The position numbers were made by a program, and so were the translations under genes. The notes below the pieces were generated by a model. It did no database searches. It was not told the DNA's origin and saw only the letters and a list, made by a program, of their open reading frames with translations. Shown piece after piece: positions 13,062-19,000 of a stretch of DNA of 64,000 nucleotides. The first letter of the stretch is position 1. Each line of letters opens with the position of its first letter. Origin of the DNA: Macrostomum lignano (Eukaryota); assembly GCA_002269645.1 (NCBI GenBank), contig NIVC01001343.1, positions 62,001-126,000 of the forward strand. The letters are read 5' to 3'.

Positions 13062-16000
13062 ATGCGCAGATGGAACAGTGCTCAGCTTGCTGAACTGCAG
13101 CAGCAACAGCAGCGCCAACAGCAGCCAGTACCGCCTCCATCTCCAGCTCTGAAGCGGGTGCTGTCCCTGCAGCGAACGCATCACAGTTTTCTTAGAAACA
13201 GCCATCAGACACCACAGGCTCTGCCGACGCCAACCTCCTCGCAGACTCCGCCGCCACTGCCGCCAAGAGGTTCCAGACGGCCTCGAGCGGACAGCGAGTT
13301 CTCAGCCATTGTGCTGGATGTCAACAGACTGTTCCAGCAGCGCAGAAGGCGACAGAAGAGGAGCCGGCACGATTCAGCGTCCACCTCGTCCTCCATCGAC
13401 AGCTCGGGCTCGGAGCGGCATCGAGACCGCGACTCGGACGGTGCAGAGTCAGACGACGAAGGAGCCTGCGAGGAGGCCGAGGAGGAGAGAGAAGTATTCG
13501 AAACGGAAGCTGAAGAACGTCGAGCCGCGGCGGAAGCTGCGGCTGAAGTCGAGGAAGCCGAGGACGCGTACGAGGAGATCCCGCTTCGAGCAATTAGCGG
13601 CGCGATGGCTGGATCGTCTCGGCGGAGCCAGCCAGCGAGCCGGCCTTCGTCCTGCAGCCAGCCGCGAACGTTTCTAGAAACCCTGGAGACGCTGAAAACT
13701 CCAACGAAACCAGAGTCGGATCCGGACTCGCCACCTGCGTTCACCACGGACTGCGAGGATCGCTATAATCAGTACTTTTATCAGCGGTTGCGCAATCAGT
13801 CCAGCGTGAGGCTGTCCGCTGGTGAGGAGAGTGTCTACTCGGGAGTGCCGCACGGCAGTCCGTACAGGTAAGCAGATGTACAGTATGCGTCAGTTGAGTT
13901 CAACAATATTTGAGCAGAAGTGAAGTTTATGAATATGAAGTACGAGCACACATGTATGACGTTTATGGGATATGAAAGTTTGGTATATGAATTTTACATA
14001 AAAATATTCAGAAGAAAGCTGGAAATCGTCCCACAACAAGCGCTGAGACGATTCTATCCGTTTCGCTGAATCCTGAGCACAAACATGCCACGCACTCAGA
14101 ACACACGCTCACACAGGGTGTACATGTACAGCGGCTATCTATATACTAATCTTCTATATACTAATTTTGCGCTGTATTCGTGCGTGCGTGTAATAGATTT
14201 TTTCGAGAATGGCTCAACCGATTCTCTTCAAACTTGCACCATTCGATAAAAAATTTTCCTGGGATGGTGCATGCATCTTGGCTAAGAAATTGATCAATAT
14301 TAAAGTGATTAAATATTCGAAAAACATGATTTTCTGCGAAGGTCAAGCAGCTCTTTCGACCTGAAATGCATTGTAAGAATGCTAGAGAAAAACCTGACTG
14401 ACTGAATTTCAATTCTGATAAAGATTGCATCACAGCAAGTTGAAAACAGTGTCGAAGAAATGCACACCCGACTTGATTTAAATTGCGTAACCATATTGCT
14501 AACTTAAATTGAGACTGATACTGGCTGACTGAGAAATTGATTATGTCATAACTTTTTACTCCAACCGATTTGCTATAAGAATTGAATTATAAGGGCCACA
14601 ATTCATGTTCTCCAATCGACAAGAGATAGCCTAGATGCGAACAGACTGGAATGCTAATGTAGCGACCTGGGTTCGAAACTTAGTAGTGCAAAATAATTTT
14701 TATTTAAACATCTTAAAAACAAAATGCTAAACATAAAAGAAGCACAACAAAAGTGGCACCATTTCAAACATTAAAGGCCACCATGTCAAACATATATGTG
14801 ATTCCATGTCGAACATTAAAGAGCCACCATGTCGAACATTAAAAAGCCATCATTACAGACATTAAGGTGCCACCAGGTCAAACATTAAAGAGCCACCATG
14901 TCGAACATAAAAGAGCCACTATGTCAAACATCAACGAGTCACCATGTCAAGCGTATACATGACTCCATTTCAGACATTAAAGTGCCACCATGCCAAACAT
15001 TAAAGAGCCACCATGTCAAGCGTATAGGTGACTCCATGTCAGACATTAAAGAGCCATCATTGCAGACATTAAAATGCCACCAGGTCAAACATTAAAAAGC
15101 CACCATGTCAAACATTAAAGAGCCACCATGTCAAACACAAAACAGCTACCATGTCAAACATAAATGGGGTGCCTACTATCTTGGAGTGCTTGCTATCTGG
15201 AGATGCGTGCTATCTGGGGGTGCTTGCTATCTGGGGGTGCTTGCTATCTGGGGGTGCTTGCTATCTGGCGGTGCTTGCTATCTGGGGTGCCTGCTATCTT
15301 GGAGTGCTTGCTATCTGGAGATGCGTGCTATCTGGGGTTGCTTGCTATCTGGGGGGGGGATGCTTGCTATCTTGGGGGTTCTAGCTATCTGGGGGTGCTT
15401 GCTATTAGGTGGATGCTTGCTATTTGGGGTGCCTGCTATCTTGGAGTGCTTGCTATTAGGTGGATGCTTGCTATCTGGGGGTGCTTGCTATCTGGGGGGT
15501 GCTTGCTATCTAAGGGTGCTTGCTATCTTGGGGTGCTTGCTATTAGGTGGATGCTTGCTATCTGGGGTGCCTGCTATCTGGGGGTGCTTGCTATCTGGAG
15601 ATGCTTGCTATCTGGGGGTGCTTGCTATCTGGGGGGTTGCTTGCTGTCCTGGGATGTTTTCTTTTTGCATTGCACTTCATTTGAGCAGTTTTTCTATTGT
15701 CTATGTGAAGGCTTTTTTTGGCCGTCTTTTTGATACTTGTAGAGAGCCAGAGATTCTATCTAGATGCCCCCCATCGGGGGGGGGCGAAGATTGCTAGTGA
15801 TTTTCTAATTGTCAGGCATTTTACACTCTCTGTGGCTTGGGGGTTGGCCCTTATGGCTGTGAATCTCACGACAACCTCCCTGTCAGTCCCCATGCACTGG
15901 TTTAATGAGATTTTCAATCAAAACCGCTACCTGTATTTAGATGGGCCTCGCCAGCCCCAGCGGCTGGATCGCAGCAGTACTTCTCGCACGGCCTAGCGGA

Positions 16001-19000
16001 GCACCCCAGCCTGAGGAAGATCTCACACTCTTCTCGCATCTCGCTGGCCAGTCAGTCGGCCGCCTCTCTGTCCGGCTGTCGGCCTGCCGAGCGCAAAATC
16101 TCGCGCGCCTCCCGAGCCGTGAAGCTGAATTACGCCTTCAACACTTCCAGCGGCAAGGCGTCGCTGCAGAAGTCCGGCTCGCAGAGTCTGTCCCAGCTGG
16201 AGGACATGGCCCAGGTGGGCAGCACGGAGCAGGGCACCAACTATAAGCGCAGCTACGTGTCGCTTTACAAGCCGTTGCATCCGCTATTCCTAGCCCTGAA
16301 GGTGTTCGGCGCATTTCACACCAGACAGAACCGAGGCAAGCCGGCGGCGAAGTTCACCCACAGCTACATCTACTCTGGCCTGGTCATGCTGGCCATGTGG
16401 TTCAACGTAGCTCGCTACCTGTTCGTGTACGACTGGGGAGAGGAACAGTTCGACTCCCTGCTTTTCCTCAAGCTCACTCATCACGTGGTTTACATCCAGG
16501 CGGCCGTAGCTTTGACCGTCATGTTCCGAGCGTCGGGGAGCTTTCCACGATTCTTCAAAGCCTGCCACGAGTTCATGTGCCGGCGGCATAGCCTGACTTA
16601 TCGGTACACTCTGGCTCGGAGGGCCAAGATCTCCGCAATAGTTGGCGTCGCCTTGGTCGCACTTGAAGTTGCGGTATTCCTCGCCTGGGCTACTCAAGCT
16701 GAAAGCGACTATTATAAAACTTTTCTGCGGCCCTACACCTATGTCGTGCCATGGAGCGACGCATCTAAAGGTGTTCTGGGCTTCTTGTACCTGACATTCG
16801 ACATGTTCATGTCTGCCGCCTGGGTGTTCCCAGCTCTGCTGTTCTGTAACTTCACCTGGATTTTCGAGCGCGAGTTTCGCTTCTTGGCTCACCGACTGCG
16901 ACTGGCCTGCACCAACGATCGAATCTTTGTTGGAGACATTGAAAAATTCCGCCTGGAGTCCTGGAGAATCAGCAAGCTGGTAGCGGCGTTTGATCAGCTG
17001 TTTAATTTCTACGTGTTCACCGTGTTTATCACGGATATTCTAAGCGTCTGCCTCATCCTCTACAACCTGATTGTGGGCAGCTTTCCCGGCAGGGGCATCA
17101 TCGTTGAGGTCTGGTTCTGGCTGATCTTTGCTCTGCTGAGACTGTTTGGCGTGACCATTTCCGCTTCCAGAGTCAACCAGGCTGTGAGTAGCGCTTTAAT
17201 GATCCCTAAATGATCGATATCTCACACATTTTTAATAATTTTTTAATAGATCGACAATTTATTCAGCTGCTAATTAACCATAGAGAAAGCGTGTAGCCAT
17301 TGGGTTAGCACCAGAGTCTTTAGCACCAGGGGCTTTAGCACCAGGGGATTTAGCACCAGGGGCTTAAGTACCAGTGTCTTTAGCACCAGGGTCTTTAGCA
17401 CCAGTGTCTTTAGCACCAGGGGCTTTAGCACCAGGCTCTTTAGCACCAGGGGCTTAAGTACCAGTGTCTTTTGAACCAGAGTCTTTAGCACCAGGGGCTT
17501 TAGCACCTAGGGGCGCCAGAACCAGGGCTTTAGCACCAGGGGCTTAAGTACCAGTGTCTTTTGAACCAGAGTCTTTAGCACCAGGGGCTTTAGCACCAGG
17601 GGATTTAGCACCAGGGGCTTAAGTACCAGTGTCTTTAGCACCAGGGTCTTTAGCACCAGTGTCTTTAGCACCAGGGGCTTTAGCACCAGGGGATTTAGCA
17701 CCAGGGGCTTAAGTACCAGTGTCTTTAGCACCAGGGTCTTTAGCAACAGTGTCTTTAGCACCAGGGGCTTTAGCACCAGGCTCTTTAGCACCAGGGGCTT
17801 AAGTACCAGTGTCTTTAGCACCAGGGTCTTTAGCACCAGGGGCTTAAGTACCAGTGTCTTTAGAACCAGAGTCTTTAGCACCAGGGGCTTAAGTACCAGT
17901 GTCTTTAGAACCAGAGTCTTTAGCACCAGGGTCTTTAGCACCAGGGGCTTAAGTACCAGTGTCTTTAGCACCAGGGTCTTTAGCACCAGGGGCTTAAGTA
18001 CCAGTGTCTTTAGAACCAGAGTCTTTAGCACCAGGCTCTTTAGCACCAGGGGCTTAAGTACCAGTGTCTTTAGCACCAGGGTCTTTAGCACCAGGGGCTT
18101 AAGTACCAGTGTCTTTAGAACCAGAGTCTTTAGCACCAGGGTCTTTAGCACCAGTGTCTTTAGCACCAGGGGCTTTAGCACCAGGGGATTTAGCACCAGG
18201 GGCTTAAGTACCAGTGTCTTTAGCACCAGGGTCTTTAGCACCAGTGTCTTTAGCACCAGGGGCTTTAGCACCAGGCTCTTTAGCACCAGGGGCTTAAGTA
18301 CCAGTGTCTTTAGAACCAGAGTCTTTAGCACCAGGGGCTTAAGTACCAGTGTCTTTAGAACCAGAGTCTTTAGCACCAGGGGCTTTAGCACCAGTGGATT
18401 TAGCACCAGGGGCTTTAGCACCTAGGGGCGCCAGAACCAGGGCTTTAGCAATTTTTCTCAACGAGGACTTAAAAATAAAGGCCTTTGATTTTCAATCGAT
18501 TCTACTTTTATGGGAATGAACAGACCTGCACTTTTATAGGAAGTATCGTTTTAGCACAAGTTTTCTATGTAAAAATATGAGCCTTTGCGTTCCTACTAGT
18601 TGTAATATCTATCTTAATCTTCTACCCACATCTGGTATAACACAGGCCTGCTCTCCGCTGGACGTCATTCAGAACATGAACTTGAAGGATTACACGGTGA
18701 ATCCAGCGAAAATTGGACAGGTGGGTGGAAACAGTACCTGAAACTATGACGTAATAGTAAAGCATTTTATTTATCTACCATTTCCTATATGCATCTCACT
18801 CTACTATATAATTATTTACAGCTAATGATTTTCCTAAACAAGCTGACCATCGGTAACATCGGCTTCACCGCCTGGAACTTGTTCACCTTGTCGAGAACAT
18901 CAACCATGACGGTGAGTAGCCGCTGCTGCTCAGGCCTCAGATTGTCTCTACTTGGCAGTTTTGTACGAGAAATCAGATTGCATTTCAACTGAACTAAAAG

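What the first reader, a model, noticed from the sequence alone, without database searches (positions are those of the whole stretch)
13062..16270. GRL chemoreceptor-family protein with a ~375-aa disordered N-terminus carrying textbook SH3 and SH2 docking motifs
Seen: exon 1 (13062-13867) splices in phase 2 to 15941 and stays in frame into the 7-TM domain. The extension has poly-Q, a basic cluster ([11 protein letters not shown]), an acidic tract, PPPLPPR (13248-13268), EDAYEEI (YEEI at 13569-13580) and EESVYSGV. Established: PxxPxR is a class II SH3 ligand and pYEEI is the optimal Src-family SH2 ligand. GR/OR-family proteins are ligand-gated channels with a cytoplasmic N-terminus that is usually short. 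Inference: this GRL may be coupled to tyrosine-kinase signalling or a scaffold, which is not a standard feature of the family.
Basis: partly seen in the sequence, partly recalled or inferred. Interest (0 to 1): 0.7.

Follow-up and report, generated by a model that had tools for sequence, protein, structure and literature searches.

The report
Flatworm taste-receptor-like gene with long tail
This is a real five-exon gustatory-receptor-like channel gene of the flatworm Macrostomum lignano whose protein carries an unusually long, disordered, cytoplasmic N-terminal tail; one tyrosine motif in the tail is conserved in a paralogue, but coupling to tyrosine-kinase signalling remains an untested idea.

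Summary
Exon 1 (13062-13867) joins 15941 in phase 2 and reads into a 7-TM domain. All the named motifs sit at the stated coordinates.

The full gene has five exons (13062-28809) and encodes 791 aa. It passes Pfam 7tm_7 (38.2 bits against a cut-off of 26.6). Its predicted fold matches only insect GR/OR structures (TM-score 0.78).

Exon 1 belongs to this gene. A 52-55 % identical M. lignano paralogue (PAA58592.1, from an RNA-seq-guided annotation) encodes the homologous extension and the start of the 7-TM domain on one uninterrupted exon. It begins MRRWQS, against MRRWNS here.

The ~380-aa extension is an outlier: the median among 110 relatives is 58 aa. It is mostly disordered (pLDDT below 50) and evolves fast (32 % identity against 71 % in the 7-TM domain), apart from about eight short islands.

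Motif results:
- DAYEEI aligns with DTYEDV in the paralogue (chance about 0.02).
- SVYSGVP aligns with SVYYGVP.
- PPLPPR is not kept as PxxPxR. The paralogue has RALPPQP there, and either pattern is expected by chance at 0.33-0.45.
- The extension cannot be aligned outside Macrostomum.

SH2/SH3 coupling is therefore possible but unproven. YxxΦ sorting signals or general phospho-regulation fit equally well. This is an interesting variant of a known family.

The parts
13062..13867 (+). Exon 1: start codon and aa 1-268 plus 2 nt of the disordered N-terminal extension. The donor is CAG|GTAAGC.
   Evidence: The public model P0001 crosses the same junction. The segment is homologous to the paralogue's N-terminus: aa 1-191 against B 1-212 gives z=5.7 with 0 of 500 shuffles reaching the score, and aa 1-320 gives z=11.3.
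13248..13268 (+). Proline-rich element PPPLPPR (aa 63-69). It fits the class II SH3 pattern PxxPxR.
   Evidence: Chance P=0.26. The paralogue has RALPPQP ([RK]xxPxxP) at the aligned place, and only the LPPxP core is shared.
13275..13334 (+). Conserved island [10 protein letters not shown]...VNRLF (aa 72-91). It combines a basophilic RxRxxS site with a predicted helix (aa 79-100), and the basic cluster [11 protein letters not shown] follows it.
   Evidence: Invariant columns R72 R73 R75 S78 E79 S81 V87 N88 R89 L90 F91. The helix has pLDDT of about 70.
13563..13580 (+). DAYEEI (aa 168-173): an acidic tyrosine motif at the C-terminal end of the predicted acidic helix (aa 137-167).
   Evidence: It aligns with DTYEDV in the paralogue, with D168, Y170 and E171 invariant. 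Chance of Y[ED][ED][ILV] is 0.019 here and 0.020 in the paralogue. The disordered stretch begins at aa 168.
13830..13850 (+). SVYSGVP (aa 257-263): the second conserved tyrosine island (YxxV).
   Evidence: It aligns with SVYYGVP in all four copies of the paralogue.
13868..15940 (+). Intron 1 (2073 nt, phase 2, GT..AG), largely made of two minisatellites (23-nt and 17-nt units).
   Evidence: This intron is absent from the paralogue, where aa 1-494 lie on one exon.
15941..17183 (+). Exon 2: the rest of the extension (aa 269-380), then the start of the 7tm_7 match (aa 381) and TM1 (helix 409-431) through TM6.
16092..16274 (+). Juxtamembrane segment (aa 320-380): RKIS...SLQK...SLSQLED...[14 protein letters not shown]. 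It is 70 % identical to the paralogue, and its distal half is conserved in annelid GRLs.
   Evidence: G[TS]N[YF]K....SLY...[RH]PL is shared with Owenia fusiformis P0003-P0006.
18646..18720 (+). Exon 3 (25 codons), with phase-0 introns on both sides.
18822..18911 (+). Exon 4 (30 codons), with phase-0 introns on both sides.
18912..28647 (+). Last intron (9736 nt, phase 0). It holds an 8.6-kb (TCTA)n microsatellite at 20049-28636.
28648..28809 (+). Exon 5: TM7 ([15 protein letters not shown]), a short extracellular tail carrying an NSS sequon, and the TGA stop at 28807-28809.
   Evidence: 100 % tblastn match to the C-terminus of P0001.

Best explanation
The locus is a genuine five-exon gustatory-receptor-like (GRL, 7TMIC) gene of Macrostomum lignano. 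It encodes a 791-aa channel subunit.

The first ~380 residues are a cytoplasmic, mostly disordered N-terminal extension. It arose before an old duplication within the Macrostomum lineage. It evolves fast, except for about eight short linear islands:
- MRRWxS
- LPPxP
- RR.R..SE.S..VNRLF
- D.YE[ED][IV]
- LETLxxLK
- A[FY]TTDC
- SVYxGVP
- RK[IA]S, plus the juxtamembrane block

Most likely the tail is a regulatory and trafficking appendage of the channel. On this view, short motifs and phosphorylation sites recruit cytoplasmic partners (kinases, adaptors or sorting machinery). These would control where the channel goes or how it gates, while the 7-TM core works like other GR/OR channels.

Shown here: the gene structure, family membership, homology of the tail between the two paralogues, predicted disorder, and the pattern of conserved islands.

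Inferred: the cytoplasmic location (from family topology and from glycosylation sequons in the C-tail), and any partner binding or phosphorylation.
For: Gene model:
- All four introns are GT..AG, with phases 2, 0, 0, 0.
- The public model P0001 crosses the identical 13867/15941 junction, and its last exon matches at 100 %.
- The paralogue P0002 (PAA58592.1) comes from an RNA-seq-guided annotation (PMC5730564). It encodes aa 1-494 on one exon, so the extension and the start of the 7-TM domain are a single ORF.

Family:
- Pfam 7tm_7 scores 38.2 bits (cut-off 26.6) and Trehalose_recp 28.1 bits (cut-off 21).
- A profile of the family hits Gr64a at 4e-20, and also MhOR5, Orco and Gr43a in the PDB.
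- The AF2 model has pLDDT above 90 over the 7-TM domain.
- The top 24 Foldseek hits are all insect GR/OR structures, with target-normalised TM-score up to 0.78-0.79.

The tail is unusual:
- The median N-terminal length among 110 relatives is 58 aa (IQR 38-81). Seven of them reach 200 aa or more, and two of those seven are fused tandem models.
- GRLs are typically about 350-500 aa long (PMC7746228).

The tail is homologous between paralogues but weakly constrained:
- Alignment scores exceed shuffles at z=8-11.
- Identity is 31.6 % in the tail against 71.3 % in the 7-TM domain.
- All 7 amino-acid differences among the near-identical copies of the paralogue fall in the tail.
- The conserved islands are listed.

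Topology: the C-terminal tails of this subfamily are rich in N-x-S/T sequons (8 in 114 aa in Owenia P0003). This fits an extracellular C-terminus and hence an intracellular N-terminus.
Against: - No expression or splice evidence was available for this exact locus. The only public model of it starts at M192.
- Only one independent relative (the paralogue) can be aligned with the tail, so 'conserved island' rests on a single comparison.
- No ortholog from another Macrostomum species was present in the collections searched.
- Nothing tests binding, phosphorylation or trafficking.
- The TM7 hallmark motif is only half kept (TY present, QF replaced by KL).
Confidence: 0.62

Rival explanations
1. 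The tail is a docking platform for SH3 and SH2 domains: PPLPPR for SH3, and phospho-Y170 in YEEI for Src-family SH2. An ionotropic chemoreceptor would thereby be coupled to tyrosine-kinase signalling or to a scaffold.
For: - The YEEI-type motif is conserved as DTYEDV in the paralogue at the aligned position. Chance is 0.02, or 0.002 when the upstream acidic residue is included.
- It lies at the start of a disordered stretch, next to an acidic helix, so it should be accessible.
- The proline-rich LPPxP core is shared. Each paralogue has an SH3-type pattern there: class II in this gene, class I (RALPPQP) in the paralogue.
- Flatworms have Src-family kinases with SH3 and SH2 domains (PMC2734992).
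Against: - SH3-type patterns are expected by chance in these tails (P=0.33-0.45), and the exact class is not kept.
- No evidence of tyrosine phosphorylation.
- The same tyrosines fit YxxΦ sorting signals.
- No such motif occurs in the long N-termini of four other GRLs: P0003, P0036, P0037 and P0146.
- I found no precedent in the GR/OR family.
Confidence: 0.18
2. The two conserved tyrosine islands (YEEI/YEDV and YSGV/YYGV), together with the acidic cluster, are unphosphorylated sorting signals of the YxxΦ / acidic-cluster type. Clathrin-adaptor complexes would read them and direct the channel to or from the sensory membrane.
For: - Both conserved tyrosines have the form Y-x-x-[I/V] in both paralogues.
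- They lie in a disordered cytoplasmic tail of a multi-pass membrane protein.
- A strongly acidic tract (net charge -13 over aa 121-160) adjoins the first one.
- That YxxΦ is the μ-subunit sorting consensus is established knowledge, cited from memory.
Against: - Yxx[ILVMF] as such is not enriched (P=0.06 and 0.18).
- The best textbook example in the tail, YQRL at aa 240, is not conserved.
- No binding data.
Confidence: 0.22
3. Annotation artefact. Exon 1 belongs to another transcript or is 5'UTR, and the real GRL starts downstream at M192 (as in the public model) or at M358, giving a protein of ordinary length.
For: - The only public protein for this locus (UniRef A0A1I8HZ47, P0001) starts at M192.
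- A start at M358 would give a canonical ~434-aa GRL (my reading).
- No RNA evidence for this locus could be consulted.
Against: - The paralogue has one continuous ORF from MRRWQS into the 7-TM domain on a single exon, and has no Met at the positions equivalent to M192 or M358.
- Protein-level similarity extends upstream of M192 (z=5.7, 0 of 500 shuffles).
- The first six residues are nearly identical.
- P0001 itself contains exon-1 sequence spliced to 15941, and it is otherwise a faulty model with two internal mis-splices.
Confidence: 0.07
4. The tail is a near-neutral disordered appendage with no specific function, and the motif matches are coincidences of composition.
For: - Low identity (32 %), many indels, and all recent substitutions among the paralogue's copies fall in the tail.
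- Several 'textbook' motifs appear, and some are plainly not conserved (YQRL, PxxPxR).
- The tail cannot be aligned outside the genus.
Against: - A ~380-aa open frame has been kept in both paralogues across a divergence that brought the 7-TM domain down to 71 % identity.
- Sharply bounded invariant islands lie in the same order in both.
- Alignment z-scores are 8-11.
Confidence: 0.15

Closest known systems
Macrostomum lignano 'Gustatory receptor' PAA58592.1 / A0A267ED12 (BOX15_Mlig019070g1-g3), 801 aa
   Same: It is a paralogue with 52-55 % identity overall and 71 % in the 7-TM domain. It has the same three phase-0 introns at the 3' end and the same MRRWxS start. Its ~385-aa N-terminal extension is homologous and carries the same ordered islands, including D.YE[ED][IV] and SVYxGVP.
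   Different: It has no intron between the extension and the 7-TM domain, but has an extra intron at about aa 490. It has RALPPQP in place of PPLPPR. It lacks the poly-Q, the YQRL motif and the long acidic helix. The two tails are only 32 % identical.
Owenia fusiformis (annelid) GRLs CAH1797060.1, CAH1796511.1, CAH1796305.1, CAH1796512.1
   Same: These are the nearest relatives outside Macrostomum (31-38 % identity, E from 1e-65 to 1e-33). They share the juxtamembrane motif G[TS]N[YF]K....SLY...[RH]PL. One of them (811 aa) also has a 319-aa Ser/Lys/Arg-rich N-terminal extension.
   Different: Their N-terminal extensions do not align with the Macrostomum tail (z about 0). They lack the YE[ED][IV] motif. 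Most have only about 100-160 residues before TM1.
Insect gustatory and odorant receptors with solved structures (Gr64a 8jme/8ze0, Gr43a, BmGr9, MhOR5, Orco 6c70)
   Same: They share the 7TMIC fold (target-normalised TM-score 0.62-0.79, all of the top 24 Foldseek hits) and are matched by the sequence profile (Gr64a at 4e-20). Orco is known to be regulated through an intracellular calmodulin site (PMC7881240) and, from memory, through PKC phosphorylation. That shows cytoplasmic regulation of such channels has precedent.
   Different: The insect proteins have short N-termini, and their known regulation sits in intracellular loop 2. I found no report of a tyrosine-kinase, SH2 or SH3 link. In the TM7 motif only TY is kept here: the sequence is TYTVLFVKL against the consensus TYhhhhhQF.
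7TMIC superfamily members with long N-terminal regions: PHTF1/2, trypanosome GRL1 (MORN repeats), GrlHolozoa (WD40)
   Same: These are precedents for a 7TMIC core fused to a long cytoplasmic N-terminal region implicated in protein-protein interaction. For example, the PHTF1 N-terminal region binds FEM1B (PMC9998090).
   Different: They belong to distant branches that are not recognised by Pfam 7tm_7, and MORN and WD40 are folded domains. Here the extension is disordered, is built of short linear motifs, and sits on a canonical GRL.

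Membership tests
GR/GRL family (7TMIC; Pfam 7tm_7 PF08395) | Match to the family profile above the curated threshold | tested here: met
   7tm_7 scores 38.2 bits (cut-off 26.6) over aa 381-750, covering profile positions 1-363 of 370. Trehalose_recp scores 28.1 bits (cut-off 21). The family profile also hits Gr64a in the PDB at 4e-20.
GR/GRL family (7TMIC; Pfam 7tm_7 PF08395) | Seven-helix fold of insect GR/OR channels | tested here: met
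   The AF2 model has pLDDT above 90 across aa ~370-760 and seven long helices. Foldseek ranks 1-24 are all GR/OR/Orco structures, with target-normalised TM-score up to 0.79; the next hit has E=0.1.
GR/GRL family (7TMIC; Pfam 7tm_7 PF08395) | [quoted passage not shown] | tested here: met
   Three phase-0 introns follow aa 683, 708 and 738. The last falls 7 residues before the TY of TM7. The paralogue has introns in the same region. I made no residue-level comparison with published insect intron positions.
GR/GRL family (7TMIC; Pfam 7tm_7 PF08395) | TM7 motif (T/S)Y-h5-QF | tested here: inconclusive
   The sequence here is TYTVLFVKL: T and Y are kept, and Q-F is replaced by K-L. The consensus of 36 relatives is TYFxxxxQF. 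Partial motifs are accepted in some GRLs (PMC7746228).
GR/GRL family (7TMIC; Pfam 7tm_7 PF08395) | Intracellular N-terminus and extracellular C-terminus | tested here: inconclusive
   No topology predictor was run. The topology is inferred from homology to solved GR/ORs. It is supported by N-x-S/T sequons concentrated in the C-tails of the subfamily (1 here, 8 in 114 aa in Owenia P0003).
GR/GRL family (7TMIC; Pfam 7tm_7 PF08395) | Ligand-gated cation-channel activity | not testable with these tools
   This needs heterologous expression and electrophysiology.
Class II SH3 ligand (PxxPx[RK]) | Consensus present in an accessible region | tested here: met
   PPLPPR is at aa 64-69, in a stretch with pLDDT below 50.
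Class II SH3 ligand (PxxPx[RK]) | Occurrence beyond chance, and conservation in relatives | tested here: not met
   Shuffle P=0.26, or 0.45 for either class. The paralogue has no PxxPx[RK]; it has RALPPQP (class I type) at the aligned place, which is itself expected at P=0.19.
Class II SH3 ligand (PxxPx[RK]) | Binding to an SH3 domain | not testable with these tools
   This needs a peptide or pull-down assay.
Src-family SH2 docking site (pY-E-E-I type) | Consensus Y[ED][ED][ILV] in a disordered cytoplasmic segment | tested here: met
   YEEI is at aa 170-173. The stretch with pLDDT below 50 begins at aa 168. The cytoplasmic side is inferred from family topology.
Src-family SH2 docking site (pY-E-E-I type) | Conservation in relatives | tested here: inconclusive
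   The motif is kept as DTYEDV in the one alignable paralogue, with chance 0.02. It is absent from the Owenia, hemichordate and other long GRL N-termini, which do not align. No congeneric orthologues were available.
Src-family SH2 docking site (pY-E-E-I type) | Tyrosine is phosphorylated and binds an SH2 domain | not testable with these tools
   This needs phosphoproteomics and binding assays.
YxxΦ adaptor-sorting signal | Y-x-x-bulky hydrophobic in a cytosolic unstructured region, conserved | tested here: inconclusive
   YEEI/YEDV and YSGV/YYGV are conserved. However, the pattern is loose (shuffle mean 1.5-1.6 per tail), and YQRL is not conserved.

The most novel reading that the evidence does not exclude
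A canonical GR-family ion channel has acquired a disordered cytoplasmic tail. Its conserved acidic tyrosine motif (D.YE[ED][IV]) and proline-rich element would recruit SH2/SH3 proteins. An 'ionotropic' chemoreceptor would then signal directly through a tyrosine-kinase pathway, or be gated or trafficked by one. To my knowledge, no such coupling has been described for any OR/GR/GRL.
Probability: 0.12. Interest if true: 0.7.

Novelty: new variant of a known kind. Interest (0 to 1): 0.32.

Why it matters
[quoted passage not shown] A GRL with a 380-aa motif-bearing cytoplasmic tail, kept in two old paralogues, suggests that some members are wired into cytoplasmic regulation (phosphorylation, sorting or scaffolding). 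M. lignano is transgenic-tractable (PMC5730564), so tail deletion and Y-to-F mutants are feasible.

On the practical side, the report gives a corrected full-length gene model. The locus's only public protein is truncated and mis-spliced, probably because the introns are full of tandem repeats.

Tried and rejected
1. Last exon. I first looked for it just downstream of exon 4 (19600-19700). No frame there gave a TM7. tblastn with P0001/P0002 placed it at 28648, beyond the 8.6-kb microsatellite.

2. Word-indexed protein searches. Searches with the full protein and with aa 182-791 returned only the same two Macrostomum clusters. An exhaustive phmmer search found 335 GRLs, but nothing between the paralogue (55 %) and Owenia (33 %), and nothing other than the paralogue matched aa 1-310. 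Orthologues from other Macrostomum species could therefore not be obtained.

3. BLASTP of the two N-termini gave only fragmentary hits. Global and local alignment against shuffles was used instead.

4. Long N-termini of other GRLs (Owenia P0003, Glandiceps P0037, P0036, P0146). They are not homologous to this tail, with z between -1.4 and +1.5. P0080 and P0145 are fused tandem gene models.

5. Pfam found no domain in the tail.

6. The 806-aa ORF on the minus strand (7288-9708) was checked as a possible second GRL. It has no Pfam match.

7. No other GRL copy lies in the window.

8. A literature search for the paralogue's gene identifier found nothing.

Full report
**What is in the sequence**

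The window is flatworm DNA, from Macrostomum lignano or something indistinguishable from it. Exons here match the M. lignano UniRef protein A0A1I8HZ47 (P0001) at 99-100 %.

It ends at a CAG|GTAAGC donor. The acceptor TTTAG|A puts 15941 in phase 2, and the frame then stays open to 17183. An in-frame TAA lies 33 nt upstream of the ATG.

- PPPLPPR, aa 63-69.
- YEEI, aa 170-173.
- The basic cluster, aa 92-102.
- Poly-Q, aa 13-21.
- The acidic tract, aa 121-169.
- EESVYSGV, aa 255-262.

**Full gene model**

I extended the gene as follows:
- Exon 2 ends at 17183.
- Exon 3 is 18646-18720.
- Exon 4 is 18822-18911.
- Exon 5 is 28648-28809 and includes the TGA stop.

The last exon encodes TM7 and lies 9.7 kb downstream, beyond an 8.6-kb (TCTA)n microsatellite. 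All four introns are GT..AG, with phases 2, 0, 0, 0. The product is 791 aa.

**Family membership**

- With all exons included, Pfam 7tm_7 scores 38.2 bits against a gathering score of 26.6, over aa 381-750. Trehalose_recp also passes. With exons 1-2 alone the 7tm_7 score was only 18.7 bits.
- A profile of 36 relatives hits Drosophila Gr64a in the PDB at 4e-20, and also MhOR5, OR28, Gr43a and Orco.
- An AlphaFold2 model has pLDDT above 90 throughout the 7-TM domain.
- The first 24 Foldseek hits of that model are all insect GR/OR/Orco structures. Target-normalised TM-scores reach 0.78-0.79, and the next hit has E=0.1.
- The three phase-0 introns near the 3' end, the last just before TM7, are a recognised GRL hallmark (PMC7746228).
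- The TM7 motif is only half kept: TYTVLFVKL, against a consensus of TYhhhhhQF.

**Does exon 1 belong to this protein?**

Yes, for three reasons.

1. The public model P0001 starts at M192 but contains '...[13 protein letters not shown]|WASPAPAAG...'. That is the same 13867/15941 junction.

2. The paralogue gives stronger evidence. M. lignano has a paralogue of 801 aa (P0002 = PAA58592.1, in three genomic copies, 52-55 % identical). Its GenBank annotation derives from a genome-guided RNA-seq assembly (PMC5730564). In its locus, aa 1-494 lie on one uninterrupted exon. Tail and channel are therefore one ORF there.

3. The paralogue starts MRRWQS, against MRRWNS here, and its tail is homologous.
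   - Alignment of aa 1-320 exceeds every shuffle (z=8.4 global, 11.3 local).
   - So does the part upstream of M192 (z=5.7, 0 of 500 shuffles).
   - The paralogue has no Met at the positions equivalent to M192 or M358.

I put the 'separate transcript or downstream start' rival at about 7 %.

**How unusual is the tail?**

An exhaustive phmmer search of 1.84 billion representative proteins found 335 relatives. For 110 of them with near-full-length matches, I counted the residues before the position aligned with aa 381.
- The median is 58 aa, with an IQR of 38-81.
- Seven of them reach 200 aa or more. Two of those seven are fused tandem models.
- The nearest relatives outside Macrostomum are four GRLs of the annelid Owenia fusiformis. 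One of them has a 319-aa N-terminal extension.
- That extension, and the long N-termini of three other GRLs, do not align with the Macrostomum tail (z between -1.4 and +1.5).
- Only the last ~40 residues before TM1 (G[TS]N[YF]K....SLY...[RH]PL) are shared across phyla.

**Anatomy of the tail**

In the AF2 model almost all of aa 22-348 has pLDDT below 50. Three helices are predicted: aa 2-20, 79-100 and 137-167. The composition is rich in Ser, Arg, Ala, Glu, Pro and Gln.

Identity to the paralogue is 31.6 % over the tail, with 88 gap columns, against 71.3 % in the 7-TM domain. All seven amino-acid differences among the near-identical copies of the paralogue lie in the tail. The tail therefore evolves fast.

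It nevertheless contains sharply bounded invariant islands, in the same order in both paralogues:
- MRRWxS.
- LPPxP.
- RR.R..SE.S.....VNRLF, an RxRxxS basophilic-kinase pattern followed by a helix.
- D.YE[ED][IV].
- LETLxxLK.
- A[FY]TTDC.
- SVYxGVP.
- ASP.AP.
- RK[IA]S.
- A long juxtamembrane block.

This is the signature of a disordered region that works through short linear motifs.

**The specific motif claims**

PxxPx[RK] is expected by chance in 26 % of composition-matched shuffles, and either SH3 class in 45 %. The paralogue does not keep it. At the aligned place it has RALPPQP, a class-I-type pattern, itself expected at 19 %. Only the LPPxP core is common. The SH3 claim thus has no statistical support, although it is not excluded.

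The tyrosine motif does better. YEEI has a shuffle probability of 0.0016, and the generalised Y[ED][ED][ILV] has 0.019, both post hoc. Taken as a prior hypothesis and tested on the paralogue, the generalised motif is present (DTYEDV), aligned by MAFFT. Its chance there is 0.020, or 0.002 with the acidic residue at -2. It sits where the acidic helix ends and disorder begins. SVYSGVP is likewise kept, as SVYYGVP.

Against over-reading:
- A third textbook motif, YQRL (the TGN38 endocytic signal, from memory), occurs at aa 240 and is not conserved.
- Both conserved tyrosines are Y-x-x-[I/V], which equally fits adaptor-complex sorting signals.
- No such motif is found in the other long GRL tails.

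**Mechanism**

Shown: a GRL channel core with a homologous, disordered, fast-evolving N-terminal tail that carries conserved short islands.

Inferred: the tail is cytoplasmic. This follows from the family topology (PMC7746228). It also fits the N-glycosylation sequons concentrated in the C-terminal tails of the subfamily.

Most likely the tail is a regulatory or trafficking appendage read by cytoplasmic partners. I give this overall picture a confidence of about 0.6. The specific readings are listed as separate rivals, and the figures are not meant to add up:
- SH2/SH3 docking: about 0.18.
- YxxΦ or acidic-cluster sorting: about 0.22.
- A largely neutral tail: about 0.15.

Flatworms do possess Src-family kinases with SH3 and SH2 domains (PMC2734992), so partners exist in principle.

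**Comparison with what is known**

Long N-terminal regions do occur in distant 7TMIC branches: PHTF, trypanosome GRL1 with MORN repeats, and GrlHolozoa with WD40 (PMC9998090). Orco is regulated through a calmodulin site in an intracellular loop (PMC7881240).

In my literature searches I found no description of a canonical GRL with a long motif-bearing disordered tail, nor of any tyrosine-kinase link. The paralogue is already in databases under the name 'Gustatory receptor'. The protein of this locus is public only as a truncated, mis-spliced model.

**Verdict**

The SH3 motif is at chance level, and the signalling link is untested.
- This is a new variant of a known kind, of modest interest.
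- The decisive data are splice-spanning reads for this locus and the tails of orthologues from other Macrostomum species. I could reach neither with these tools.

Noticed in passing
window 20049-28636: An 8.6-kb (TCTA)n microsatellite (about 2150 copies, 90 % matches) fills most of the last intron of the GRL gene. The GenBank annotation of M. lignano excluded transcripts overlapping repeats (PMC5730564). That may explain why this gene is missing there and is public only as a truncated model.
   Followed up: partly
window 14750-15653, 17305-18450, 19024-19510: The introns of the gene are packed with minisatellites: 23-nt and 17-nt units in intron 1, a 15/45/105-nt unit in intron 2, and a 16-nt unit in the last intron. 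Some give long spurious ORFs, for example 17507-18421 on the minus strand.
   Followed up: no
window 13868-15940 compared with L001 10001-11482: Intron 1, between the tail and the channel domain, is absent from the paralogue, which instead has an intron at about aa 490 that is absent here. There has been intron gain or loss between the two old paralogues; the direction is unknown.
   Followed up: partly
window 13866-13871: The donor of intron 1 overlaps an in-frame stop (AGG TAA). A transcript that retained intron 1 would encode a soluble 269-aa protein made only of the tail.
   Followed up: no
P0001 (UniRef A0A1I8HZ47) compared with window 16380-17060: The public model of this locus starts at M192 and has two internal mis-splices. 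One removes '[29 protein letters not shown]'. The other replaces '[12 protein letters not shown]...ITDILS' with an out-of-frame '[11 protein letters not shown]'.
   Followed up: partly
window 16092-16274 (aa 320-380), and P0003-P0006: A membrane-proximal motif, [KR][KR].S[LIV][KQ][FY] ... G[TS]N[YF]K....SLY...[RH]PL, is shared by the flatworm GRLs and four Owenia fusiformis (annelid) GRLs. It defines a lophotrochozoan GRL subfamily with a conserved pre-TM1 segment and a basophilic Ser site.
   Followed up: partly
window 10727-12436 (+): A single-exon ORF of 569 aa lies 626 bp upstream of the GRL start, on the same strand. It has only weak coiled-coil-type Pfam hits, all below threshold. M. lignano transcribes multi-gene units resolved by trans-splicing (PMC5730564), so the two genes might share a transcription unit.
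   Followed up: no
window 7288-9708 (-): An 806-aa open frame on the minus strand is rich in Gln, Ser and Glu and has no Pfam match. It is not a GRL.
   Followed up: partly
window 30685-38126: A 7.4-kb satellite of a 28-nt unit (about 267 copies, 90 % matches) shows strong strand skew and is open in all three forward frames. Many further tandem arrays lie between 42 and 58 kb.
   Followed up: no
window 3934-4656 (+): An ORF of 240 aa matches the Pfam 'PT disordered repeat' family (58.6 bits).
   Followed up: no
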